64,000 nucleotides of DNA from Heteronotia binoei. Taxonomy: Eukaryota. The stretch spans positions 143,282,001 through 143,346,000 of the forward strand of contig NC_083223.1 in NCBI RefSeq assembly GCF_032191835.1. Reading direction: 5' to 3'. Shown here piece after piece: positions 9,779 through 24,315 of this stretch. The translations under genes and the position numbers were made by a program. The notes under the pieces are model-generated. The model had not been told where the DNA came from. It was given only the letters and a program-made list of their open reading frames with translations, and searched no databases. Numbering within the stretch: position 1 is the stretch's first letter; each line of letters starts with the position of its first letter.

Positions 9779-10307
9779 TATAAGTTGGAATGGCAGTGTG
9801 ATTTCCCTTCACTGCTTCCAGTACCAGAACAACTGGTCAGGAAGTATATATCATAAGGGTTCTGGAATCTGGAGCTTGTTTTGCTTAGTTTCATTGCTAG
9901 TGACTGTACATGTGTTACTGATTATTACTGTGTGCTTGAACAAGTCCAGATTCTGATAGATGATTTTTTTTCCTTATTCCTCGTCACTCCCTTTTTACTA
10001 TTAGTTCTAGTATAAGTTGTATCTCTTTATTCCATTGCTTTATCACATGCAGTGTGCACCACTGAAAAACTGTAGTGTCATTTGTGTGCATTATAGTGAC
10101 TGAGTGGAGAGCACACAAATCATCATCCACAGTGTGTTTGTCGAGGAATGTAATTCTTTTATTCACTGTTTTCACCAACTTTACCAGAATTTATTTTGCA
10201 CCAATGTTCTTTTTTTTAAAACTTTAATAGAAAAACATACAACCAAACTATAAAACATAATAGCCAGGAATACCATCAACACTCTATTACAAACCCTATG
10301 TTCACAG

Positions 10308-13300
10308 TTACCAACCATCTAACTTTAGTTGCACTGAGGTAACTTTATCCTTATTGCACAAAAACTCTAAAACTGGTTTCCATGTTTCATCATATTCTGA
10401 TAAGGAAACTACCGCACAAGAGTCCCCCCAAAATGGATTATGCATAATCCTGCCCATCAAAAATTGTTCCCAGTTTTTGGTACCATTGTCTAAGTAAAGA
10501 ACTTGTGGGAGACTTCCAATTCTTGGCAATAATCAAACGAGCAGAAGCAACCAGTGTTGAGACAAAAGTTTTGATGGCTTTATCTATCATTGAATCAGCC
10601 CAAAGATCCAATAATAAGAATTCTGGGGAATAAGGCAATGGAAGACTCACCATGTTGGAAATCTCTTTATGAATCTCCCTCCAAAAATTCTGAACAATAT
10701 GGCATTCCCACCACATATGTAAGGTGTTGCCTTCCTGCTTACAAGATCTCCAGCATAATGGGCTCAAAGACTTGTTCATTAGACTTAGTTTGTGTAGCGT
10801 TAAATACCAATTGGATAGCAACTTATAAAATTGGAGTTTAATATTCCAACAGCGGGATTTATTGGAGGGAGAGTTCCATATCTGTTTCCAATCAGATTCG
10901 GAGAGGGTAAGTTCTAAAGAATTTGACCATTTTGTTTATATGGGAGAGGGTCCTTATATACTGCTGCTACTAATAATCTATAAAGAGCTGAAATCATGCC
11001 TTGTTTACCTGCATTCCAATTCCGAATTAATTCCTCAAATGAAGTTAATGGCCGGAGTAAGTTTTTAGACCTGATTAGTTTAGTGATAAGATTTTTTAAT
11101 TGGAAATATCTAATCCAGGAAACCTTAATTCCAAACTTCTTTTCCATTGAGGATTTATCTAAGAGTCCCCCACATCTTTAATCCAGTTACTTATAAACAA
11201 CAGACCAAAGGATCTCCATTCCTTAAATTCACCTGGATCCTTCCCTGCTGGAAACCAATCCTGGTTAATGAAGGTCATTAAAGGGAAAATACCTGGAGCT
11301 AAAATTTTCCTGTATTTGTCCCATATTTTTGAGCATGTTGTCCAGTTGGGAGTTAGAGGAAATCAAATTAGGCCTATTTTTAGAAGGGAACCAGATGGTT
11401 ATAGGTAATGAAAATGGTGAGGAAAAAAAGCTTTCTATTGAAATCCAAGCTTCAACCAAATTCAATTTTAGAGCCTGAGTCAATGGAACCAGAGAAGCAG
11501 CAGCATAATATAAAGCTAGGTTTGGGATGTTCAGATCTCCCAAATCTGAAGGCCGGCAGAGTGTTTGAAATCCAACTCTGGGTTTGCGATAAGACCAAAT
11601 GAACTTATTAAGGGCTCTTTGCCAGAGTTAATTTTCTTTAGTAGTATCTTAACAGGCAGGGCACGAAACAAAAACATAAATTTAGGAAGTATGAAAGATT
11701 TAACCAATGAAATTCGATCAAACCAAGAATGACATTGTCTATTCCATTTACAAAAAAGGATAAGCACAGATTTAAATAATTCATTAAAATTAACATGGAC
11801 AATGTCATTAAAAAAATACTAGGATATTAACTCCTAGATATCTCAACTTCTTAGAGACCCACAAAGTTAAATCGTGTTTGTAGCCTGTCTACCAAGTTTG
11901 GGGTCTAATTAATGGGGAGCAGCTCTGATATAGACTGATTAACCACCAAGCCAGAAACTAAACTAAACTTGTGTAAGGTATCTGAAATTACTTCCAGGGA
12001 GTCAACTGGAGAAGAGATATAAATAATAATGTCATCAGCATAGAGCGAGATTTTATATTCGTAGTCTTTCACTTGAATGCCTTTTATCTGAGGGCTCTGT
12101 CTGACGGCTCCTGCTAAAGGCTCTACAGCAAGTGCAAAAAGGAGAGGGGATAGTGGGCATCCTTGCCTAGTACCCCTATTTATATCAAATGCACCAGATT
12201 TCAAATTGTTTGCTTTAACTTGGGCTTTTGTGGAGGAACATAGAGCCTGCAGGGTACACAAAAATTTGGGGCTGAAACCCATTTGTCTAAAAAGGGAAAG
12301 AAAATAAGACTTTTCTATGGAGTCAAATGCTTTAGCCATATCTAGACTCACTACAACCACCTCTTTTTGCCGAGTTTTACGAAAATTAATTATATTTAGT
12401 GTACGTCTGATATTGTCCGTTAAATTTCTATTGGGTATAAAACCCATTTGATCTGATTTAATAAGCTTCTCAACATTTTTTTTAGATGATTTGTCAATAC
12501 AGAAGTGAAAATTTTGTAATCCGTATTCAATAATGCTATTGGGCAGTATGATGCTGGGTCTAAGGAGTTCTTACCTTCTTTTAGAATGGGGACAATTGAT
12601 GCTGTTCTCCAAGAGAGAGGACATCCCCCCTCTGGAGGATATTATTACATACATTAGTTAGGGGAACTAATAAGTGAGCAGAAAAAAACTATAAAATTCG
12701 GCCCTGAAACCATCATTTCCTGGAGCTGAATTGGCCTTCACGTTTTTAATAGAGTCTAGTATCTCCTGTGAAGTTATAGGGTTGTCCATAAGGCATCGAT
12801 CTGAATCTGATAAGGAAGGGAAAGAAAAGTGTTAGAGGTAAAGAAATCCTCAATTGCTTGTTCTTTTGGCCGTGAAGTGAATATAACTTTTCATAATAAT
12901 CTGCAAAGACATTCATAATCTCCCTGGATGAGTATTTCTTTTCTTCCTTAGAATCCAACAAGCCCTGGATGTGGTGAGATTTTATCTCCTTTTTAGTTTT
13001 CCAAGCCAGAAGCTTTAAAGATTTGGGGGAGTGATTCTAATTTTGTTTTGTAAAAATGAGCTGCCTTTGGATCCATTGTGAGTCAAATGCATCTAACAAT
13101 TTATGCTCAGCTAACAATTTTTTATAGATCCCCCCCTCTTAATTTATGCTCCTGTTCTAACTTGGCTATGTTAACTATCATGTGCTCTCTAATCTTTGTT
13201 CTCTCTTTTTAAAAATGGGATGCCAGTGAGATCAATTTTCCTTGCATAGTTGCCTTCATAGCATCCCAATAGATGGCATCTGATATATCCACAGATTCAA

Positions 13301-13970
13301 AATAAAAATTCAGTTCATTATTGATCTGGTCCTTAAGGTCTTGTCTGTTCAAGAACATTGTATTAAATGACCAGGATTTATCAAAAAAGCCTTCCTCCCC
13401 CCAGTCCAAGAATGGTCTGTAAATAACTTAGGACCTATATCAGCAGACTTCAATCCTGGTAAAAGACCTTGAGAAACTAAAAGAAAATCAATACATGTGT
13501 GCACATTGTGACGGGCTGGATAATAAGAATATTCTTTTGCTCTTGGATACAAGTATTTCCAGGATTCAAAAAGATGTTTTTCTAAAAGATGTCTAAATTT
13601 ATCTGAGGCTCTTATTAAGGGGCCCCTATACTTTCTAGAGCTAGTTGTGTCTAGCATAGGATCTAAAACTAAGTTAAAATTTCCTCCAAAGGTTAATTCT
13701 CCTTCTTCAGGGGGGGCCAACAGTAGCTCTCCAGATGTTTTTTGCCTACAATTCCCATCAGCCGCAGCCAGCATGGCCAATGGCTGGGGCTGATGGGAGT
13801 TGTAGGCAAAAACATCTGGAGAGCTACTGTTGGCCACCCCCGCCCCTTCTTGAAAAATTTGCAACTTTTCTAGTGTAGATTCTAAAAGTCAACTTGAGCT
13901 AAATTGGGTACATAAATGGTGGCTAAAGTTAGTTTTTCCCCATAAATGTGTCCTTTTAAAAATAAATAAC
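10308..13970 (-). pseudogene. ORF2: Degraded ORF2 of the old L1 (C-terminal EN, RT, CCHC)
   Basis: GFIPNRNLTDNIRR, SLDMAKAFD, GTRQGCPLSPLLF, SLYADD and CWRSCKQEGNTLHMWWEC, with many stops and frameshifts. Confidence 0.92.
13708..13842. mobile_element. Palindromic hAT MITE inserted in the old L1 EN region
   Basis: caggggggccaacagtagctctccagatg...catctggagagctactgttggccacccc. TSD (t/c)ccttctt (7/8 match). Confidence 0.85.
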
Positions 13971-14097
13971 GGGGGGCGTGGCGTCGCACGCATAGGGAAT
14001 GGACGCCTGAAAACAGAGCTCCTTACTTACCCCTGCCAAATCCACTTAAGCAAGCGCCCAGCGTTGTTGTTTGTTTTCTTTTCTTTCTTTAATTAGT

Positions 14098-15093
14098 ATG
14101 GGAACAGTAGATGGTCAAAAATCCAGATCAAAAAGAAATTCAAGGAACTCTGTTAAAGACTATTTTCCAAAAAAGCCCAAGGCTAAGGCCTCAGGAAAAG
14201 CAAGCAGCCCTGCAAGCAAGATGGCGTCGGAAGGAGGGGAAAACACAGCAGCAGACCTAGCTTCATTTCGTTCTGAGGTAATGGAGGCTTTTCAAAAACT
14301 GGAACAAAATATGACTGACAAAATATCTGCCATGATCCAGCCCCTTTCTGCTCAATTGGAGGGTTTCAAAACGTCCTTAGAGAAGGTGGCAGAGACGGCA
14401 GATTCTGCTTTTAACATGGCAAGTGCTGTGCAGGAGGACTCTCAGTATTTTTATAAAAGAGATGAATGGGCCACTGATAAAATTATTGCACTTGAGAACC
14501 AACTGAAATTGGGGAATGTTAAAATTCGTGGGCTCCCCGAGAATTCTGCCTCCCCCTCTGATTTAAAAACTCTTATAGTCTCCTGGTTATCGAAGGCATT
14601 GGGTTTTTCTGACTCTGATCTCTGTGCCCTGGAAACAGTATATAGAATTGGCCCATTGCGCAGACAGAAAACTTCGTTGCCTAGGGACATTTTAGTCCGT
14701 TTCTCTTCTGCCTCAGTGAAATCCAAGTTGCTGCAAAAAGCCCGGGCTATAAATCCTCTTCTGCTAGGAGATTACAACGTCCAAATTCTACAGGATTTGT
14801 CTTCTGAAACCTTGCAAAGGCGGAAAAATTTGAAGCCAATTATAGAAATCCTGAACAGGGAAAACATCAGATATCGATGGGTTGCTTCGTACAAGCTGCA
14901 AGTTACAGTGCAGGATCAGTCATTTGTAGCTGCAGATCTCGACTCAGGCCTATGCATGCTCCGCGATATGAATCTTCCTGTTCCCACCGGCCTTCTGGAA
15001 GCAGCCTCACATGTTCATTCAATAACTTCAGATACTAGATGGCGTCGTGTGCCTTTGAACCGTCCTGATCGGCCTGTTTCTTCTAGAAGCTAA
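14098..15093 (+). CDS. ORF1: L1 ORF1p (coiled coil, RRM, CTD), 331 aa from the first ATG
   Basis: Open frame; heptad-rich region; NVKIRGLPE, VYRIG, PRDILVRF; QDLSSETLQRRK...IRYRW. Confidence 0.93.
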   Translation: MGTVDGQKSRSKRNSRNSVKDYFPKKPKAKASGKASSPASKMASEGGENTAADLASFRSEVMEAFQKLEQNMTDKISAMIQPLSAQLEGFKTSLEKVAETADSAFNMASAVQEDSQYFYKRDEWATDKIIALENQLKLGNVKIRGLPENSASPSDLKTLIVSWLSKALGFSDSDLCALETVYRIGPLRRQKTSLPRDILVRFSSASVKSKLLQKARAINPLLLGDYNVQILQDLSSETLQRRKNLKPIIEILNRENIRYRWVASYKLQVTVQDQSFVAADLDSGLCMLRDMNLPVPTGLLEAASHVHSITSDTRWRRVPLNRPDRPVSSRS

Positions 15094-16546
15094 ATGCTGG
15101 AACTGTTGCTATGCAGAAATCTCCCCCCCCCTTTTTTTTTTTTTTTTTTTGTTGAGGATTCCTGGCGTCCTTTTCCCCCTGACATATAAGCTTTGCCTAC
15201 CGAACTGCTGACTTATAAGCTTTGCCTACGTGGTGCTTATGAAGCAGTGTTTATATATGAAATTGGGGGGTTCCCCCCCCTTTTTTTTTCCCCCCTTGTT
15301 ATTTATATTTTTTTGAAAGCAATGTTATGAATGTGAGGGAGTTATTAATTTAAATCAACTCATTAAAGGAAATCTTCTTGGTTGATTGGGTATGCATGAT
15401 TGGAAGAGTGGAGTGACTTGGAATATATGGTTTAAAAAGTAAGTGGAAGTAGGTGTTTGAATGGGGAGGCTGGGTGACGAGAGAGGGTGTGGGAGTGAGT
15501 GAGAGAGAGTGAGAGGGGGGGTAGATCTGAGTGAGAAACTTGAATAGTATGATCAGGGCTTTATATCAATATACTTCTTTCTACTGTGAGTTAATGAAGT
15601 GTCAGGTCCTTTTCCCTTCCTTTGTGAATTCTTGAATGGAAATGAGTGTGTGAGACAGAGGGTTGGTAGGGAATGTATGTGTGTGTCAGTTTGTGCCGTA
15701 TGATATTATGAGGGTTTGGAAATTTGTTTCCCTTACTATCACATCTCCCTACATAGGCTTATAAGAGGCTGAAGGATAGTTGGTGGGGAGTGTTTGGGGA
15801 GATCAGTATTTAATAGTGTTCACAATTCTGTTTAAAGTTTCATTGTATTTTTATCATAGTGTCTTAAGTCTCACTATAACTTTGTGATCGAGATCCGATG
15901 CTGTTACACATGGTATATTAGTTTGCCTGTACTTATCTTTAATTCACTAATCTGAGTTGATAAAAGGCACAGATTTTATTATATGTAGCTTTCTAGGCAT
16001 TTTAGCCTTGATTCAATCAGCTTTGTGTGGCCTTTCATTATAAAACTCTCTATACATTCGGCTCTGTTATTTTGTTTATAAATTTTAATTTTGCTGGGTT
16101 GATATTGTTAAATATAAGCATTTTTGGCAGAGAGGGAGAATGGAGAACTTCGGTTTTTTTTAAATAGCTCCATTTGGTAGTTGTTGCTAGTTGTGTGGTG
16201 TCTTCAGCAAGGAAGACTTCCGCTTCAAATTTAACCTTTTAAGTAAGTAGTTGTTGTTTTCCCAAGTTTGGGTTAACAGAGTTGGAGGGTGAGTTAGTGG
16301 CTAGTGTCTGTTAATGCTAGACCACTGGTGTTGGTTATGGTTTTTTGTTTTTGTTATGGGCAGCATAACTGTATTGAATTATTATGGTTTTAGCTGGAAG
16401 TTTTTTAAAGCCTTTGATTTGAAATCTGTCCTCATACCTTTGAAATTTGATCTACAGGATTCATCTCGAGCTATCCTGGTGGCACCTGGGTTAAATGCTA
16501 TAAATTGTAATAATTTTGATAACCTTGGTTTTTTCCTCTTTCAATT

Positions 16547-19500
16547 ATGGCAGAGTGCCACTTGAAATTTCTTTCTCTAAACTGTAACGGGCTAAATAAT
16601 TTAATTAAGAAAAAACGGGTTGCCTCTGCCATCTCTCGTCAGAAACCAGATATAATTTTTTTGCAAGAAACTCACCTTAAGGGTAACCAGCCCAGGGTCT
16701 TCCAGTCCAAATTTTTTGCTCATCAATTTCAAGCTTATGGGTCTTCCAAAGCAAGAGGTGTGGCCATCCTAATAGGTAAATCAGTCCAATTCACTTTTGA
16801 AAATTCCTCAATTGACCCTAGGGGTCGGTATATTTTTATCAATGGGGTCTTTAATGGTAGCCCTTATACTCTGGCATCGGTGTATGCTCCAAATGATGGG
16901 CAAATTGCATTTATTAAAGATACGTTGTCACAACTTCAAACCTTTCATACAGGGCCCATTATCTTGGGAGGAGATCTCAACTATGTTGTTAATCCTTCTT
17001 TAGATAGATCTCAAAAAAGCCTGCTACCTATATCTGCCAATAAACGGTCTCAATCAAAAGATTTGAATGGCCAAAATGATTTAGCTCAAGTTTTTCAATC
17101 CTATAATCTGTCAGACATTTGGAGAAGCAGACATCCAAATGAAAGAGATTATACCTTTTTTTCTTCTCGTCATCAAACTTATTCCAGAATAGATTTTCTT
17201 TTAGTTTCAGATTCTATTTCTAATCTTTTTTCTAAAGTAGAAATTGGCCCAATGATTTGGTCTGATCATGCATGGTTGGAAGGGTATATGTCAGGCGTTA
17301 CTGACAGATCTTTTTCTTTTAATTGGAGATTGGATAGTAAACTTCTGTCTATGAAATCGGTTACAGATTCCATTGAAAAAGACATTAAAGAATTTTTTCA
17401 ATTCAATATGGAGTGTGGAGTACCCCAGCATATAGTTTGGGATTCTTTTAAAGCTGTAATTCGTGGCAGATTTATGGCTATTGCCTCTTCGTATAAAAAA
17501 GAAAAAGAAAAAATTAGATCTGATTTGGTTGCTAACATTACCAAATTGGAAGAGAAATTTAAAAAATTTGGTAGCAAAAAAACTTATTCAAAACTTCTTA
17601 TAGAAAGAAAAAAATTAGAATCTCTTGACGTCTCCAAGATTCAAAAACAAATGGCTTTTATAAAACAAAAATATTGGTTTCGAACTCCTCAATCTCTTAA
17701 ACTCCTATCATGGAAGGTTAAAAAGAGAGTATCCTCAATGGCTATTTCTTCCATTCGTTCTAAAACTGGTACCTTGAAACATTCCACTAAGGATATTGTA
17801 GGAGTGTTTAAAAAGTACTATTCATCTCTATATTCCTCCCAGCATCCATCAGCAGACCTTATTTCATCTTTCTTAGACACTCACTCAGTTATTAAGCCTG
17901 TCTCTCCTGAGGTTAAATCCTTTTTGGACAAACCTTTTACTGCACTTGAAATACAGGAGACTATCAAGTCTATGAAATCCAATAAGTCTCCAGGCCGAGA
18001 TGGCTTTATACCAGAATTTTATAAATTTTTTAACATTTTGTTGGCTCCCATCTTGGCAGACGCCTGTAATCAGTTTGTACAGTCTGGTTCTTTCCCTGTT
18101 ACTTGGTCACAGGCAAAAATCATACTTCTTCCAAAGAAGGACAAAGACTTACTAGACCCTAGTTCATACAGGCCGATATCGCTCCTTAATTGTGATTATA
18201 AGATTTTTACAGCAGCTCTGGTGGCTAGGCTTAATACCTTTATAGGGAACTGCATTCATCCTGACCAATCGGGCTTTATCCCACACCGTGAGTTAACGGA
18301 CAATACTAGAATGGTCCTTGATGTTATTCAATACTGCCGGAAATTTAATATTGAGTCTTCTTTTATCTTGTCTATTGATTTTGAAAAAGCCTTTGATTCC
18401 GTGGAAGTTCCTTATCTTACAACCTTACTGCAGAAAATGAACTTTGGCCCGAATTTTCTGAAGATAATCCATTCTTTATATAAATCGCCTTCTGCTATTC
18501 TTTCTATTAATAATTTGGATTCTGAAGAATTTAATCTTTTCAGAGGGACGAGGCAAGGTTGCCCATTGTCTCCTCTGCTTTTTGCGATCGCAATAGAACC
18601 TCTTGCTAATGCTATCCGTGATACCAATATTATCACTGGTATCCCTATTAGAAAGAAACAAATTAAGGTGTCTTTGTTTGCAGATGACCTAGTGCTTTTT
18701 GTTACAAAACCTAAGTCTTCTTTACCGGCTGTCTTTGATTTATTATCTGTATTTTCTTCTATATCAGGCCTTCGAGTAAACCCATCCAAAACCATTCTTT
18801 ATCCCATCACAATTTCGGATGCTCTCCAAGACTCCATCTACTCTAATTATCACTTTAAAAAAATTGATAGATATTGGACATATTTGGGGATCAATATACC
18901 TTTGAAATTGGGAGATATTTTTAAAGTTAATCATCATTTATTGATTAAGGACATTCTTACCCTGCAAAAGAATAAGAATTCTTCACTCATTCCCTGGAAT
19001 GAAAAAATTCAGATTATTAAATCTTTTATTTTCCCCAAATTTCTGTTTTTATTTCGAGCCATTCCTATTCTTATTCCTGAGGATTTATTTGTGGGTTGGC
19101 GTCGTTCGTTCTTAAGATATATTTGGAACAAGGGCTTGTCTAGAATAGGGTATGCAACTCTTATTCGTTCTAAATCCTCAGGGGGTCTGGCTCTTCCGGA
19201 TCTCCATAAATTTTATGAAGCTGCCATTTTAGGTGGTCTTATTAGATACCATGATGCTGACTTAAATTCAGGTTGGAAGGCCCTAGAAGATACCTATCTA
19301 AATAACAAATCGTTTCACTCTATATTATGGGAATTTCCGAAGAATAGACCTCCTATTATCTCCTCCAACCTTTTTCTTAAAGCTATTTTTCAGATTTGGG
19401 ACAAACGTCGCCTCTCTTTAGCCCCTCCAATATCTCCACTATCTCATTTTGTGGATGTTTCTTGGTTTCAACCGGGGTTTTTTTACAAGTCTTTTCCAAT

Positions 19501-20428
19501 TTGGAAAAAATATAACCTTTCTAGGTTTGTGGATATTTTGTCCAATGGAAAAATGCTCGACAAAAAATCTTTGGAAGAGAAAACTGGTGGGACAAAAATC
19601 CCATGGTTTGAATACTTGCAAACTAACAACTTGGTGACATCACTCTTAAAGAAATACAATTTCAATCGACCTCTTACTTTCTTTGAACACTTGCTATATT
19701 CTCCTTTTTTAAAGCGGAAGGGACTGATTTCATTTATTTATAAGGGTTTGCTAGACACTGATGCTGTTGATTTGTTATCCTATCAAGAAATTTGGCAAAG
19801 GAATAGTTCAATTAATTTTCAGGAGGATGTTTGGCAACAAATCTGGTCTTCTCCTTCGTATGTTTCAAAATCATTGAATATACAATTACAAACTCAAAAA
19901 ATTTTGTTTCGGTGGTATTTAACACCTCAGAGATTAAGCCATATGGCGATAAATCAATCCTCCAAATGTTGGAAAAATTGTGGAGAGGTGGGCACATTTA
20001 CACACTGCTGGTGGTCTTGCCCGAGGGTGCAGTCGTTTTGGGCAGTAATTGTGGCAAAAATCAAGGATATCACGGGCTATAGTTTACCCTTAAGATTGGA
20101 ACTCATTTTGCTTGACTGTTGGAAAGATATTTCTATTACTTCTCTCAATAAATCCCTGATATCCCTTTTACTAGCTGCTGCTAAAATGGTGTTAGCCCAA
20201 TTTTGGAAATCTCCCAATATTCCTCCAGTTAAAGCCTGGTATGCTAAAATCTGGGAGGTCTATGCGATGGACAAGATAGCAGATAGTTTATGCAATATAA
20301 ACAATTCAGAAAGTAACGAATCTCTGATGTACAAGTGGCTTCCATTTCTTAAATTTTCTTTTGGTCCTGTAGATCAGATGCGTACATGTATACCTGGTAG
20401 ATATTATGACATTATTAATTTGATGTAA
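16547..20428 (+). CDS. ORF2: L1 ORF2p (APE endonuclease, RT, C-terminal CCHC), 1293 aa
   Basis: Uninterrupted frame. EN motifs LQETH, GDLN, SRIDF, SDH. RT motifs IDFEKAFD, GTRQGCPLSP, LFADD. CWKNCGEVGTFTHCWWSC. Confidence 0.97.
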   Translation: MAECHLKFLSLNCNGLNNLIKKKRVASAISRQKPDIIFLQETHLKGNQPRVFQSKFFAHQFQAYGSSKARGVAILIGKSVQFTFENSSIDPRGRYIFINGVFNGSPYTLASVYAPNDGQIAFIKDTLSQLQTFHTGPIILGGDLNYVVNPSLDRSQKSLLPISANKRSQSKDLNGQNDLAQVFQSYNLSDIWRSRHPNERDYTFFSSRHQTYSRIDFLLVSDSISNLFSKVEIGPMIWSDHAWLEGYMSGVTDRSFSFNWRLDSKLLSMKSVTDSIEKDIKEFFQFNMECGVPQHIVWDSFKAVIRGRFMAIASSYKKEKEKIRSDLVANITKLEEKFKKFGSKKTYSKLLIERKKLESLDVSKIQKQMAFIKQKYWFRTPQSLKLLSWKVKKRVSSMAISSIRSKTGTLKHSTKDIVGVFKKYYSSLYSSQHPSADLISSFLDTHSVIKPVSPEVKSFLDKPFTALEIQETIKSMKSNKSPGRDGFIPEFYKFFNILLAPILADACNQFVQSGSFPVTWSQAKIILLPKKDKDLLDPSSYRPISLLNCDYKIFTAALVARLNTFIGNCIHPDQSGFIPHRELTDNTRMVLDVIQYCRKFNIESSFILSIDFEKAFDSVEVPYLTTLLQKMNFGPNFLKIIHSLYKSPSAILSINNLDSEEFNLFRGTRQGCPLSPLLFAIAIEPLANAIRDTNIITGIPIRKKQIKVSLFADDLVLFVTKPKSSLPAVFDLLSVFSSISGLRVNPSKTILYPITISDALQDSIYSNYHFKKIDRYWTYLGINIPLKLGDIFKVNHHLLIKDILTLQKNKNSSLIPWNEKIQIIKSFIFPKFLFLFRAIPILIPEDLFVGWRRSFLRYIWNKGLSRIGYATLIRSKSSGGLALPDLHKFYEAAILGGLIRYHDADLNSGWKALEDTYLNNKSFHSILWEFPKNRPPIISSNLFLKAIFQIWDKRRLSLAPPISPLSHFVDVSWFQPGFFYKSFPIWKKYNLSRFVDILSNGKMLDKKSLEEKTGGTKIPWFEYLQTNNLVTSLLKKYNFNRPLTFFEHLLYSPFLKRKGLISFIYKGLLDTDAVDLLSYQEIWQRNSSINFQEDVWQQIWSSPSYVSKSLNIQLQTQKILFRWYLTPQRLSHMAINQSSKCWKNCGEVGTFTHCWWSCPRVQSFWAVIVAKIKDITGYSLPLRLELILLDCWKDISITSLNKSLISLLLAAAKMVLAQFWKSPNIPPVKAWYAKIWEVYAMDKIADSLCNINNSESNESLMYKWLPFLKFSFGPVDQMRTCIPGRYYDIINLM

Positions 20429-20625
20429 TTAATATATGGACAGAGTATTTATTTTTTAATTCAGCTGCCAATTTTGTATGTGTGTGTGAATGTATGTATG
20501 TGTTGTTTTGTTTGTATTTTGTATATATATATATATTTTGTGTTCTGCTGGTATGCTATGCTTATACACAAAGAATGATTGCAGATACAGTCATTGATTG
20601 CTTTATTTGTATGTTTATTAAATTC

Positions 20626-20658
20626 AATAAAAAAGTTTTTGGGAAAAAAAAAAAAAAA
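20626..20658 (+). terminator. L1 polyadenylation signal and poly(A) tail
   Basis: aataaa at 20626-20631 and an A run at 20644-20658. Confidence 0.85.
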
Positions 20659-20951
20659 TAACGCCCTCTTTGATCCATCTCTTCAGCTTCAATGACAAAT
20701 GGGACGTTCTTTGACAATAAAATGGCAACCCCCCTTGACTTTGAGGAGCCAGGGGCTATTCTTTGAATACGGTAAAATGGAGATTTAAAAAGCCAGGGTT
20801 TTGTTTTTTTCAAGTGAGTCTCCTGCACAAAGACTATATCTGAATGTTCCCTTTTCAATAGAGAAAGAAATCTGGATTATTTAATGATATTATTTAATCC
20901 TCAAATATTGACTGAAGTTATATGCAGGGAAGGTACCTTTGTACCTGACAT
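20656..20951 (-). pseudogene. ORF2: N-terminal EN segment of the old L1 ORF2
   Basis: ATG at 20951: MSGTKVPSLHITSVNI*GLNN...DIVFVQETH...GSSKSRGVAIL...DQRGRY. Confidence 0.9.
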
Positions 20952-21029
20952 GGGATTAGAAACGGGTATAGTTGATTCTTGCAAATTATTTTGGAACCCT
21001 GCTAAATTTTGAACGAATGTTTTTAATTG

Positions 21030-22401
21030 TCAGTTTTCTTTCTCTATTAATTCTAATTGCCCATCTGAATCTATAAACACACACCCATTATTAAGTGGGA
21101 CTGTTTGAGCTGGAACCAAAACATTAACAAAAGAATTAATAGTTGGATTTTGTGCCAAAGGATCATATGTTTCAAGTTCAAAATCTTCAAGGTGGTGACT
21201 ACGAATTTCATCCATGCCATCCACTGTTTTGCTGGGGTACTGAATAAAGTCGTATTCTTTTGGTGGCAAAAGCTTGCTTTCCACCAAAGCAGCTTCATAG
21301 GGTTTGATTGAAGCTGAAGATGATGACTCTAAGGTGGGTGGGAGTGGCGCCACCTCCATATTGACCTCCATTGGTGGAAAAGTCTGAGGCGAGGATACAA
21401 GACCACAGTCCTTAATTCCTAAAAGTTTGGCTCTCAGTTGCTCTAGTCTATTGGTAATTTCTTCTTGCTCCAATAATGGTAAAGCTGTAAAAGAGTTGAT
21501 TAAGTTCTTCTCCAGAGTAATATCCAGGAGGGGGCGTTCCTTATCTTCCAAAGATGCCGGAGTATCAGCCCAGCTAATTAGATCCTGATGGGAACAACTA
21601 GATGAAATATCCTTAGAAGGTTTGATTGTAACTGGAAGGAGTGGAGCTCGTACTAAGTTGGTAAAAACTTGTATTGGAAAAATTCCTTTGGAGTTTAAAA
21701 ATCTTTTCTGTCTGAGGAGTAATGATGGAATGAATGGACAATCAAAAGTTAATAGTAGTTTACATGCCTGATAAGAGTTGCTGAGGCATTCTACTGACTT
21801 CAGGTCCAAGGAGTTGATTTACTGAACAGAGTTCTTAGATGTCAAGCAGCCTTGGATTTTGTGTTCCAAGAAGGGATGTGCCCATTATAAGGGCAGATGT
21901 TTAAACAAATCTCGTGGGGCTGCAGAACTAACTGATATAAGTTCTCAGCCGTTCCCATTTGAGATGAAAAAGAGGCTTTCTCGTTGGTACTTTTCCTGAA
22001 GGGGAGTTAGAGGGTTGCCATGTAGCTGGCTTCTTAGTGGATCTTGTCTCTGCAGCTGAATTAAATGATCAAGCTTTGAGCCCACTGAGTTTAATTGTTC
22101 AAAAATATCGACCATAGTTCTAGCAGTCAATAATGAAAGCTCTTTCAGTATGTCACAGGAAATACTATCAATTTTTTTATTTGCCTGTGGAGGAGAGCCT
22201 GAATCCCCATTTTGATTGTCTTGCAAATTATTATGTTGTAAATCCTCAGATATGGAAGTTAAAGCTGCATACCGATTTGAAGTGGGTACATTGTATGAGT
22301 GATTGTTAACAGGGGCAAAGTAATCACCAATCTTACTTTGTTTTGGGGGCTGGGGGAGAAGTAAAATCTTCAGGCTCCCGAAAATGTTTGCATGCTCCCA
22401 T
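21030..22401 (-). pseudogene. Atypical ORF1-position protein of the old L1 (about 456 aa reconstructed)
   Basis: ATG at 22401, one frameshift near 22341, then one frame with stops at 21945, 21885 and 21819, ending at 21030, 78 nt before the ORF2 ATG. Confidence 0.7.
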
Positions 22402-24315
22402 GTCTATATTCACTTTGCCCTCTTCTGTTGTTAAGCTGCTTCGTTTAAAAGGTAAATAACAGCTAGTCACTCCAAAGCAATCTCCTCCTCCAAAATATTG
22501 AGTGTTCCCCCACTTCAGAGTTGTTTGTAGCTAAACAATTTGCAAAGTTTTCACTAGGCAGCAAGCTATTCCACCAGCAGAAAACGCCAACAATTATCCA
22601 ATTAAGCAGGCAGGGCTCTTTTTCATATCGTCGGCAGACTATTGTAAAATAGGCTGCTCTAAGTTAAAACAAGGAAAGATAAAAATCCTCAAGAAATTCT
22701 GAGCAAAGATTTACTGACAAAACAAAACAAAATAAAAATTACTTAGTATTTGGAGCAGTGAATTCAGCCATCTGCAGCCTCTGCCGAAAACTGGAAGCCA
22801 CCAAAGCAGCTATGCCTTGTGAGTATTGATCACCAATGCTCTTTTTCAATGAACAATGAGCAAGACAGAAAAAGATAATATTTTGATAATGTTAGCCAGC
22901 ATCTGTAACCTTCATCTAACTTCCATTATAGAGAGTGCAATCAACAACACATTTACTCTACTTTTAATGCTTCACTCCCTGTTTTAAGCCTCCCAAATGA
23001 CTGAGCAGCTCCTGTTCTCTGCCTATTTTGGGACTTCCAGTTGCCAATTCTGCTGTGCTAGTTACTCCCAAGGAATGTGATGTTCTACATACAAGGATAC
23101 TACTGGTCGGGAAAAAATGGACATTTTCTGCCTAAAATATGATAGAGACAATCCTTTGGATGAGGTACACTATCCCAGAGAATTATAGCCCAATTAACAT
23201 GGAAACAAAAAAAAAAAAAACATGTTTCCCATTGAACTGAGTTTCACATTAAAGCCAATGAAAATGAAGCTAAGCAAGGATTACTACAGATTCCATGCTA
23301 CTAGCAAACATATTAAGAACACTGTAGCACAAAGGAAGAGATGCCCTAGCAGATGGATCCTGCTCAACAACTTCCCACTGGTAGATCAGCTCCCAGGACA
23401 CCTGGGATTCCCTTTTCTAGGTACTGCTCTGGCATTCTACAAAAGGCGGCTCTGAGAAGACTGCAAGAAGAGGAAGTGAAGTTATGCCCTTTCAGAAACT
23501 TTGTTACCTTCTTAGGGAGAAAGCCACTGTAGAAAACCAGTATGGGTCCTCGTTGATTTAAAAGTAAATGCAAATATGGAATAACATGCACCCATAATAA
23601 ATAAACACATGTACTGGACTTACAAGGAAGTAAAAGTAATAACGTTGTGAAATACAACTGAAGTCAAGACGTTATTTGCATAGCTTTAAAAAGTATTTGC
23701 AAAAAAAGTAAGCAAGCCAGCCTTTACAATTCATCAATACAAAAAAATTAGTATGTCAAACAATCTTAATTTATTTGAATAAATTACCATGTCATTAAAA
23801 TAGTGTAAGACTACATCAGCAGCTCAACTTTATAAATCTAAATTTTATGGGGTATAATTCAAGTTTCTAAATATCCCAAAGCTTATGATTTAACACACAC
23901 CAAACTGCAATGTAAAAACAGAGTAAATCTAATATGGAAGAAACTTTTTTCCTCTTTTTTTTTGGGGGGGGGGGGTGTTTAACCTATGAATATCCAATTG
24001 TTTCACTGATATCTAATTTTAAATGTTTAAGTTCTTACAACCAGATTGAGCCATTTTGTCTGCAAGTATATGTATTAGCAGGGTTTTTTCAAGAGCTTAA
24101 TTTTCCAAAAGCTTACAGAGCTTAATTCTTCAAGAGTTTACAGGACTCTTAGTACACGGTCTACTGTAGGCTCCAGAAGGATTGGCTGCATCAGGGATGT
24201 GTGGCCTAATATGCAAAGGAGTTCCTGCTACAAAAAAAAGGTCTTGTGTATTAGGCACAACTAGTCTATATGAATCAATGTACAAAATGGGACTTAGTAA
24301 TGTAAGTAATGTAAA

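What the first reader, a model, noticed from the sequence alone, without database searches (positions are those of the whole stretch)
21030..22401. L1 carrying a non-canonical ORF1
Seen: inside the TSD-bounded old L1, the ORF1 position holds one reconstructable frame of about 456 aa (one frameshift, three stops). It runs: basic start, PKQSKIGDYF, VPTSNRYAAL, a short helical segment, KLLLTFDCPFIPSLLLRQKRFLNSKGIFPIQVFTN, then a long acidic/Pro-rich tail. I see none of the L1 ORF1 motifs present in the two other ORF1s of this window (IRGLPE, RDILV.F, IRYRW). Established: LINE ORF1s are modular and have been replaced repeatedly across clades. Inference: this L1 lineage acquired a different ORF1; from recall, the SNRY..L motif looks more like CR1/L2-type ORF1s.
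Basis: partly seen in the sequence, partly recalled or inferred. Interest (0 to 1): 0.72.

Follow-up and report, generated by a model that had tools for sequence, protein, structure and literature searches.

The report
L1 retrotransposon with a borrowed ORF1
An old lizard L1 jumping gene carries, in place of the usual L1 RNA-binding gene, a decayed copy of an unnamed ORF1 protein family that otherwise belongs to a different kind of LINE, which shows that whole ORF1 genes have been swapped between LINE lineages in reptiles.

Summary
Window 22401-21030 (minus strand) is a decayed ORF at the ORF1 position of a TSD-bounded L1 (10210-22830). The true decay is three frameshifts plus one stop, not one frameshift plus three stops.

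The ORF belongs to a real, unnamed protein family, here called "ORF1-X". A library scan found 23 representative clusters, mostly intact proteins of 409-468 aa, including multi-copy proteins in Podarcis lilfordi. No sequence match to L1 ORF1p was found.

A confident AlphaFold model gives this layout:
- an N-terminal PIP-box motif;
- a PTSNRF motif;
- a long helix;
- a basic RRM-fold domain (human L1 ORF1p RRM among the tied top structural hits);
- a helical hairpin;
- a conserved C-terminal NGC motif;
- no L1-type CTD.

In eight other loci ORF1-X precedes a different ORF2 ("Y type"), which is non-L1 and only 20-31% identical in RT. The window's ORF2 is true L1: it matches human ORF2p in both RT and CTD.

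Two further loci (L010, L013) also join ORF1-X to L1-type ORF2. L013 has a perfect 19-bp TSD and an intact ORF1-X. The ORF1 and ORF2 trees disagree, so at least two ORF1 exchanges are needed.

The scan's index holds related unchecked notes (PIP box on LINE ORF1; a "chimeric LINE") elsewhere in this genome.

The parts
22831..22841 (.). Target-site duplication, 5' copy (CACCAATGCTC), followed by TTTTT as expected for an L1 endonuclease site
22402..22830 (-). 5' UTR of the old element (429 nt)
   Evidence: position between the TSD and the ORF1 ATG
21030..22401 (-). Decayed ORF1 of the ORF1-X family. Three frameshifts (~22336-22350, ~22040-21994, ~21818) and one in-frame stop (21842-21844). Stop codon TGA at 21030-21032.
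22317..22340 (-). QSKIGDYF, a canonical PIP-box pattern (Qxx[ILM]xx[FY][FY]) conserved at the N-terminus of most family members
22260..22289 (-). VPTSNRYAAL, the family's conserved [ST]xN[RQK][FY]xxL motif
22050..22151 (-). Amphipathic long helix (putative coiled coil), ILKELSLLTARTMVDIFEQLNSVGSKLDHLIQLQ. It corresponds to helix 92-132 of the P0001 model.
21633..21946 (-). Basic RRM-fold domain, broken by a stop and a frameshift. Beta1 YQLVLQPHEICLNICPYNG lies in the other frame; beta3-alpha2-beta4 reads KLLLTFDCPFIPSLLLRQKRFLNSKGIFPIQVF.
21411..21515 (-). Conserved helical hairpin (LEKNLINSFTALPLLEQEEITNRLEQLRAKLLGIK)
21033..21092 (-). Conserved C-terminal motif NNGCVFIDSDGQLELIEKEN
20952..21029 (-). 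78-nt ORF1-ORF2 spacer, homologous to the spacer of locus L010
20659..20951 (-). N-terminus of the old L1-type ORF2 (endonuclease), 51% identical to the young L1 ORF2, cut off by the nested young L1
13875..20658 (+). Nested young full-length L1 (start approximate). Canonical ORF1 at 14071-15093, 1.45-kb inter-ORF region, intact ORF2 at 16547-20428, poly-A at 20644-20658.
10438..13702 (-). Rest of the old L1-type ORF2 (EN end, RT, C-terminal CCHC domain), decayed
13710..13840 (.). 131-bp near-perfect hairpin (MITE-like insertion) inside the old ORF2
10199..10217 (.). 3' TSD copy (CACCAATGTTC, 10199-10209) and the poly-A tail seen as a T-run (10210-10217). The 3' UTR is 10218-10437.

Best explanation
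Window 22401-21030 (minus strand) is the dead ORF1 of an old, full-length, TSD-flanked L1-clade retrotransposon. That L1 lineage does not carry the usual L1 ORF1 (coiled coil-RRM-CTD). It carries a member of an unnamed ORF1 family, here called ORF1-X.

Layout of ORF1-X:
- a basic MG..KR.R start;
- a PIP-box motif;
- a PTSNRF..L motif;
- a long helix;
- a basic RRM-fold domain;
- a helical hairpin;
- an acidic/Pro-rich tail;
- a C-terminal NGC..D..G.L..I motif.

In most squamate copies ORF1-X is the first gene of a different, non-L1 LINE. That LINE has a ~1100-aa ORF2 and a 3' end of AATAAA plus a trinucleotide repeat. ORF1-X has been exchanged between that LINE and L1 at least twice. The likely route is recombination, or insertion of a 5'-truncated element between the ORF1 and ORF2 of another element. 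The resulting L1/ORF1-X hybrids kept retrotransposing.

Inferred function: like other ORF1 proteins, ORF1-X oligomerises through the helix and coats the element's RNA with its basic RRM. The PIP box may recruit PCNA.

Shown here: family membership, fold, linkage to two ORF2 types, and propagation. Inferred: RNA binding, oligomerisation, PCNA binding, and the direction of transfer.
For: Family:
- The library scan with window:21033-21818:- found 23 relatives, best 6e-21.
- All conserved blocks are kept in the window copy.
- The family profile hits three window pieces at 6e-47, 9e-21 and 5e-15.
- The family is multi-copy in Podarcis lilfordi.

Fold:
- The AF2 model of P0001 shows helix 92-132, a beta-alpha-beta-beta-alpha-beta domain at 185-277 (pLDDT 82-98), and a hairpin at 335-377.
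- Foldseek and VIA-align top lists are nearly all RRMs. Human L1 ORF1p RRM 2w7a_B scores Z 7.2 against a top Z of 7.6.
- The RRM segment has pI 10.3.

The window's ORF2 is L1:
- A 180-aa RT piece hits human ORF2p at 4e-36 against 6e-13 for R2.
- The canonical young L1's equivalent piece scores 2e-39.
- A 127-aa C-terminal piece hits human ORF2p residues 1112-1232 at 2e-15.

Partner Y-type ORF2 in L001, L004-L009 and L011:
- Y types are 34-42% identical to each other over the full length, and 20-31% identical to L1 in RT only.
- Human ORF2p scores 3e-25 against 2e-19 for R2, with no CTD hit.

Hybrids propagate:
- The window element has a TSD and an L1 target site.
- L010 shares a homologous junction with the window.
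- ORF1 of the window versus L010 gives omega 0.30 with dS ~1.2 over 225 codons.
- L013 has a perfect 19-bp TSD, poly-A, an intact 392-aa ORF1-X, and an L1 ORF2 40% identical to the young L1.

Discordant trees:
- The ORF2 tree splits L1 from Y at 100/100 with a long branch.
- In the ORF1 tree the window, L010 and the Y-linked L011 form a clade (97/99), and at least 2 changes of ORF2 type are needed.
Against: - Only three L1-linked copies were seen (the window, L010, L013).
- L010 and L011 are short contigs assembled from single runs, and their host species are unknown.
- L013's ORF1-X is only 31% identical to the window's, and its junction does not align. One origin versus two origins of the hybrid therefore stays open.
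- The ORF1 tree backbone is poorly resolved and unrooted, so the direction of transfer rests on parsimony.
- The Y type was not placed in a named LINE clade.
- A deep common origin of ORF1-X and L1 ORF1p is not excluded. The architecture is helix plus RRM, and hhalign's best local match is in register over the RRM, though weak (E 0.019, probability 2.5%).
- No experiment shows RNA binding, oligomerisation or PCNA binding.
Confidence: 0.8

Rival explanations
1. Local accident only. A 5'-truncated L1 happened to land between the ORF1 and ORF2 of a Y-type element at this locus, and the composite never moved as a unit.
For: This is the mechanism proposed for ORF1 shuffling in PMC4120745, and it must have happened once somewhere. 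The element is old and heavily nested.
Against: - The TSD and poly-A flank the whole composite, not the L1 part alone.
- No Y-type ORF2 remnant follows the poly-A.
- L010 carries the same junction with a homologous spacer, at roughly 70-77% nucleotide identity.
- ORF1 omega of 0.30 between the two copies indicates long selection as a working gene.
- L013 is a third, TSD-flanked L1 with ORF1-X.
Confidence: 0.04
2. No swap. ORF1-X is simply a very diverged descendant of the normal L1 ORF1, inherited vertically. The Y-type elements are a deep L1 relative that inherited it too.
For: - Both proteins have the same order: N-terminal region, helix, RRM.
- The N-terminal [IV]xD[YF]F motif also occurs in the two canonical ORF1s of this window.
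- hhalign's best alignment is in register over the RRM.
- L1 endonuclease is the best solved match for one Y-type endonuclease.
Against: - Under co-divergence, the L1/Y split should be the deepest branch of the ORF1 tree, as it is in the ORF2 tree (100/100).
- Instead, L1-linked ORF1s sit among Y-linked ones. The Y-linked L011 is 45% identical to the window's ORF1, while the corresponding ORF2 types are 20-31% identical.
- Canonical CC-RRM-CTD ORF1s coexist in the same window on an L1 ORF2 that is equally distant from the old ORF2 (39%) and from L013's (40%).
Confidence: 0.1
3. Assembly artefact or host-gene pseudogene. Either the ORF1-like stretch is not part of the element, or it is a processed pseudogene of a cellular gene.
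For: No Pfam family was found, and database names read 'hypothetical protein'.
Against: In eleven loci where downstream sequence was read (L001-L008, L010, L011, L013), the protein is followed within 27-154 nt by an EN+RT ORF2 on the same strand. The family is multi-copy. The junction is reproduced in independent assemblies.
Confidence: 0.02

Closest known systems
L1 ORF1p, type II (coiled coil-RRM-CTD; Pfam Transposase_22; PDB 2YKO, 2W7A)
   Same: First ORF of an L1. It has an N-terminal unstructured region, a long helix, and a single non-canonical basic RRM. The human ORF1p RRM is among the tied best structural matches (Z 7.2).
   Different: - No detectable sequence similarity.
- No CTD. A disordered linker, a helical hairpin, an acidic tail and a C-terminal NGC motif take its place.
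- The whole protein is near-neutral or acidic (pI 5.6-9.0, against 9.7 for the canonical ORF1 here).
- It carries a PIP-box motif.
ORF1 shuffling in the Jockey superfamily (Metcalfe & Casane 2014, PMC4120745)
   Same: An ORF1 shared by phylogenetically distant ORF2 lineages within one host group. The hybrid-by-insertion or recombination model applies.
   Different: Here one partner is a bona fide vertebrate L1. [quoted passage not shown] The exchanged ORF1 is also a family without any annotated domain.
Lizard L2 'second ORF without conserved domain' (Ruggiero & Boissinot 2020, PMC7140322)
   Same: An upstream ORF in lizard LINEs with no recognisable domain, reported as acquired independently more than once.
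   Different: Lizard L2 ORF2 is reported as ~55% GC, whereas the Y-type ORF2s here are 40-44% GC. Identity with that ORF could not be tested because no sequences were available.
PIP box of human L1 ORF2p (PMC10830420)
   Same: A Qxx[ILM]xx[FY][FY] motif in a LINE protein.
   Different: Here it sits at the N-terminus of ORF1p, and in P0009 at the C-terminus. PCNA binding is untested.

Membership tests
L1 ORF1p type II (Transposase_22) | Detectable sequence homology to L1 ORF1p | tested here: not met
   phmmer of the pieces and hmmsearch of the 32-sequence profile against PDB give no L1 ORF1p hit at E<=10. The positive control, the canonical ORF1, hits 2yko at 9e-10. BLAST and Smith-Waterman against the canonical ORF1 give z=0.5. 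Pfam is silent, but the Pfam control also fails (E 0.18), so Pfam is uninformative.
L1 ORF1p type II (Transposase_22) | Coiled coil N-terminal to the RRM, forming trimers | tested here: inconclusive
   A confident 40-residue helix at 92-132 (pLDDT 77-94) lies upstream of the RRM. Oligomeric state was not tested.
L1 ORF1p type II (Transposase_22) | Single RRM-fold central domain | tested here: met
   AF2 domain 185-277 has pLDDT 82-98. Top structural hits are RRMs, including 2w7a_B (Z 7.2, rmsd 3.1, 81 residues aligned).
L1 ORF1p type II (Transposase_22) | Conserved C-terminal domain (CTD) directly after the RRM | tested here: not met
   After the RRM the model shows about 55 low-confidence residues and then two helices. 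The IRYRW-type motif is absent. There is no PDB or Pfam hit to the CTD.
Type I ORF1p (RRM + CCHC zinc knuckle) | CCHC zinc knuckle(s) after the RRM | tested here: not met
   There is no CX2CX4HX4C pattern and no zf-CCHC hit in ten intact members.
L1 clade (for the window's old ORF2) | APE endonuclease + L1-type RT + L1 C-terminal CCHC domain | tested here: met
   - EN N-terminus is 51% identical to the canonical lizard L1.
- The RT piece hits human ORF2p at 4e-36 against 6e-13 for R2.
- The C-terminal piece hits human ORF2p 1112-1232 at 2e-15.
- Overall 39% identity to the young L1 over 983 columns.
L1 clade (for the window's old ORF2) | Poly-A tail and TSD at a TT/AAAA-like site | tested here: met
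   T-run at 10210-17, an 11-bp TSD with one mismatch, and TTTTT beside the 5' copy. A match this good occurred in 63 of 5000 shuffles.
L1 clade (for the Y-type ORF2 that usually follows ORF1-X) | L1-type RT and CTD | tested here: not met
   Only the RT matches human ORF2p (3e-25, against 2e-19 for R2), with no CTD match. Identity to L1 types is 20-31%. The 3' ends are AATAAA plus (ATG)3, (CTA)3 or (GTT)5, not poly-A. The RT motif is QAGFRxGRSTxDH rather than GFIPxR..DN.
Lizard L2 (for the Y type) | GC-rich ORF2 (~55% GC per PMC7140322) | tested here: not met
   Y-type ORF2 GC is 40-44% in six loci. No reference L2 sequences were available for a tree.

The most novel reading that the evidence does not exclude
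A branch of squamate L1 elements, still recently active in at least one species (L013: perfect TSD, intact ORF1), has replaced the universal CC-RRM-CTD ORF1 with a sequence-unrelated helix-RRM protein. That protein is shared with, and exchanged more than once with, a non-L1 LINE clade that ends in microsatellite tails. If so, ORF1p would be interchangeable between LINEs with very different ORF2p and 3'-end rules. Its conserved terminal PIP box would place PCNA recruitment on ORF1p instead of ORF2p.
Probability: 0.45. Interest if true: 0.8.

Novelty: new variant of a known kind. Interest (0 to 1): 0.66.

Why it matters
[quoted passage not shown] ORF1p and ORF2p are generally thought to co-evolve through cis-preference.

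A true L1 ORF2 lineage that retrotransposed for a long time with a heterologous ORF1 lacking the CTD bears on this in three ways:
- It gives a natural experiment on which parts of ORF1p L1 actually needs.
- It extends ORF1 shuffling, so far argued for CR1/L2/Jockey elements, to vertebrate L1.
- It defines an unannotated ORF1 protein family that genome annotation currently labels as hypothetical proteins.

The conserved PIP box is a directly testable lead for host-factor recruitment.

Tried and rejected
- The word-index search with the 262-aa piece found nothing. With the family alignment it returned only three members. The full library scan was needed.
- Single-sequence AF2 of the window piece was useless (pLDDT 36).
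- Pfam as a test for Transposase_22 was rejected after the canonical control failed.
- Y type as lizard L2 was rejected on GC content. Y type as CR1 is doubted only from my memory of the RT motif. Y type as Vingi remains a candidate by elimination, but the Vingi paper is not held and a review calls Vingi-1 single-ORF.
- The findings index by sequence was blank.
Natural intact relatives were used instead, and breaks in decayed copies were left as gaps or X.

Full report
**Anatomy**

The window holds an old minus-strand L1 spanning 10210-22830.
- tblastn with the intact young ORF2 maps L1-type ORF2 pieces at 10471-13702 and 20658-20927.
- These pieces are separated by a nested plus-strand full-length L1. 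It has a canonical 340-aa ORF1 at 14071-15093 and an intact 1293-aa ORF2 at 16547-20428.
- A 131-bp hairpin insertion lies at 13710-13840.
- The old ORF2 ATG is at 20951-20949, 78 nt downstream of the stop of the candidate ORF1.
- The composite ends in a T-run (poly-A) at 10210-10217.
- It is flanked by CACCAATG[T/C]TC at 10199-10209 and 22831-22841. The 5' copy is followed by TTTTT, which fits an L1 endonuclease site.
- An 11-mer match this good occurred in 63 of 5000 shuffles of an 800-nt region.

**The observation**

The frame running 22403->21033 has 3 stops in 457 codons, against 15-41 in the other frames. All quoted motifs are present. The frame-by-frame reconstruction needs correction.

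A profile built from 14 intact relatives hits three window pieces:
- 22358-22041 (9e-21);
- 21994-21848 in a different frame (5e-15);
- 21815-21036 (6e-47).

The middle piece reads ENLYQLVLQPHEICLNICPYNGHIPSWNTKSKAA and is the first strand of the RRM. The copy therefore carries three frameshifts and one in-frame stop:
- a frameshift near 22336-22350;
- a frameshift near 22040-21994;
- a frameshift near 21818;
- a stop at 21844-21842.

**What the protein is**

The window pieces match nothing in Pfam or PDB, and the word-index search was blank. The full library scan found 23 relatives (best 6e-21, 47% identity), mostly intact proteins of 409-468 aa.

One cluster is 19 'hypothetical predicted proteins' spread over Podarcis lilfordi chromosomes.

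The alignment shows seven conserved blocks, all kept in the window copy:
- MG..KR.R;
- KQ[ST]KI.D[FY]F;
- [IV]PTSN[RQ]F.PL;
- L.AKT[VL]..IF..L....L;
- a ~100-aa block: Y.L.LQP.KICL.IC.FKG..P.W......HL..LL......IDL..VE.L.N.NQ.QR.LL.F.S.KIP.LL...K..L...GIFP.RVF.N;
- DLI.W, then E..L..SF..LP..EQ..I..RL..L...L;
- a C-terminal NGC[IV].D..G.L..I.

The AF2 model of P0001, built with this alignment, gives:
- a confident long helix at 92-132;
- a beta-alpha-beta-beta-alpha-beta domain at 185-277 (pLDDT 82-98);
- a helical hairpin at 335-377;
- the rest at low confidence.

Foldseek and the Foldseek-independent VIA-align search both return almost only RRM domains for residues 184-281. The human LINE-1 ORF1p central domain (2w7a_B) scores Z 7.2 with 81 residues aligned, tied with the top Z of 7.6.

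The RRM segment is basic (pI 10.3), while the flanks are acidic.

Sequence-level homology to L1 ORF1p was not detected:
- The family profile finds no L1 ORF1p in PDB at E<=10.
- The canonical ORF1 of the same window hits 2yko at 9e-10.
- hhalign against the canonical ORF1 gives its best local alignment in register over the RRM, but at E 0.019 and probability 2.5%.

Pfam's silence must not be used as evidence. The canonical lizard ORF1 also misses Transposase_22 (E 0.18).

There is no L1-type CTD and no zinc knuckle.

**Genomic context of relatives**

In L001, L004, L005, L006 (Podarcis), L007, L008, L009 and L011, ORF1-X is followed closely by an EN+RT ORF2 of about 1100 aa. Where both ORF ends were read, the spacers are 27-132 nt.

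These 'Y-type' ORF2s have the following properties:
- They are 34-42% identical to each other over their full length (41-57% in RT).
- They are only 20-31% identical to L1-type ORF2, and in RT alone.
- They hit human ORF2p at 3e-25 against 2e-19 for R2, with no CTD match.
- They carry QAGFRxGRSTxDH where L1 has GFIPxR..DN.
- They end in AATAAA plus (ATG)3, (CTA)3 or (GTT)5 rather than poly-A.
- Their relatives are in Anolis, Podarcis and Gekko.
- Their 40-44% GC does not fit the ~55% GC reported for lizard L2 ORF2 (PMC7140322).

I could not name the clade.

**The window's ORF2 is true L1**

- A 180-aa RT piece hits human ORF2p at 4e-36 (R2 at 6e-13). This is nearly as good as the equivalent piece of the canonical young L1, at 2e-39.
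- A 127-aa C-terminal piece hits human ORF2p residues 1112-1232 at 2e-15.

**Is the hybrid a lineage?**

L010 (a contig assembled from run SRR13336341) holds the ORF1-X C-terminus, a spacer homologous to the window's, and an L1-type endonuclease that is 47-55% identical to the young L1.

Between the window and L010, ORF1 has dN 0.36, dS ~1.2 and omega 0.30 over 225 codons. The two copies therefore diverged mostly under purifying selection.

L013 (GCA_051903775.1) holds a roughly 6-kb L1 with:
- a perfect 19-bp TSD, AATAAA and poly-A;
- an intact 392-aa ORF1-X;
- an L1-type ORF2 with a single break, 40% identical to the young L1 over 1165 columns.

L013's ORF1-X is only 31% identical to the window's, and its junction does not align.

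**Discordance between the trees**

The ORF2 tree separates L1 types from Y types by a long branch with 100/100 support. The window's old ORF2, L013 and the canonical young L1 are mutually 37-40% identical and unresolved.

The ORF1 tree has no such split. The window, L010 and the Y-linked L011 form a clade (97/99), with L011 45% identical to the window's ORF1. At least two changes of ORF2 type are required.

This fits ORF1 exchange as modelled by Metcalfe and Casane (PMC4120745). It does not fit co-divergence. Because most of the diversity of ORF1-X is Y-linked, transfer from Y to L1 is the more parsimonious direction. The tree is unrooted and its backbone is weak.

**Literature**

- Ivancevic et al. 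report non-type-II ORF1 in animals only in connection with the Tx1 group (PMC5203782).
- No paper was found on this ORF1 family or on a PIP box in a LINE ORF1p.

**Limits**

- The host species of the run-derived contigs are unknown.
- No reference LINE library was available.
- Function is inferred from fold and position only.
- I built no consensus and no repaired frame.

Noticed in passing
window 13875-20658 (+): A nested young L1 with an intact canonical ORF1 (340 aa) and an intact ORF2 (1293 aa), separated by an unusually long 1.45-kb inter-ORF region (15094-16546). No TSD is obvious, and about 35 codons of the old ORF2 are missing at the insertion site, which suggests a target-site deletion.
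   Followed up: partly
window 13710-13840: A 131-bp near-perfect hairpin (two nested inverted repeats, 94-97% complementary) inserted in the old ORF2. It looks MITE-like.
   Followed up: partly
P0009 (L007:327-2165), residues 590-597: This 612-aa family member lacks the N-terminal PIP-box motif but has QRKITDFF near its C-terminus. A motif that moves between termini is what one expects of a functional short linear motif.
   Followed up: no
window 14071-14170 and 27709-27680: The two canonical L1 ORF1s of the window share an N-terminal [IVL]xD[YF]F motif (SVKDYF, CLTDFF) with ORF1-X (KIGDYF), although the rest of the proteins are unrelated in sequence.
   Followed up: partly
L010:1185-1310: In L010 the codon aligned to the window's ORF1 stop (TGA) is CGA. 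The ORF1 frame therefore runs on through the spacer for about 40 more codons.
   Followed up: no
L011:1290-1500: In this decayed Y-linked copy, the ORF1 C-terminal motif and the ORF2 endonuclease start lie in one frame with no stop between them.
   Followed up: no
L001:5277-5520, L004:5421-5575, L005:5020-5065: Y-type elements end in AATAAA followed directly by a short trinucleotide repeat, (ATG)3, (CTA)3 or (GTT)5, instead of a poly-A tail.
   Followed up: partly
window:14071-15090:+ (protein): Pfam's current Transposase_22 model (PF02994, 98 positions) scores a bona fide lizard L1 ORF1 at only E 0.18. Pfam-based screens would therefore miss canonical reptile ORF1s.
   Followed up: yes
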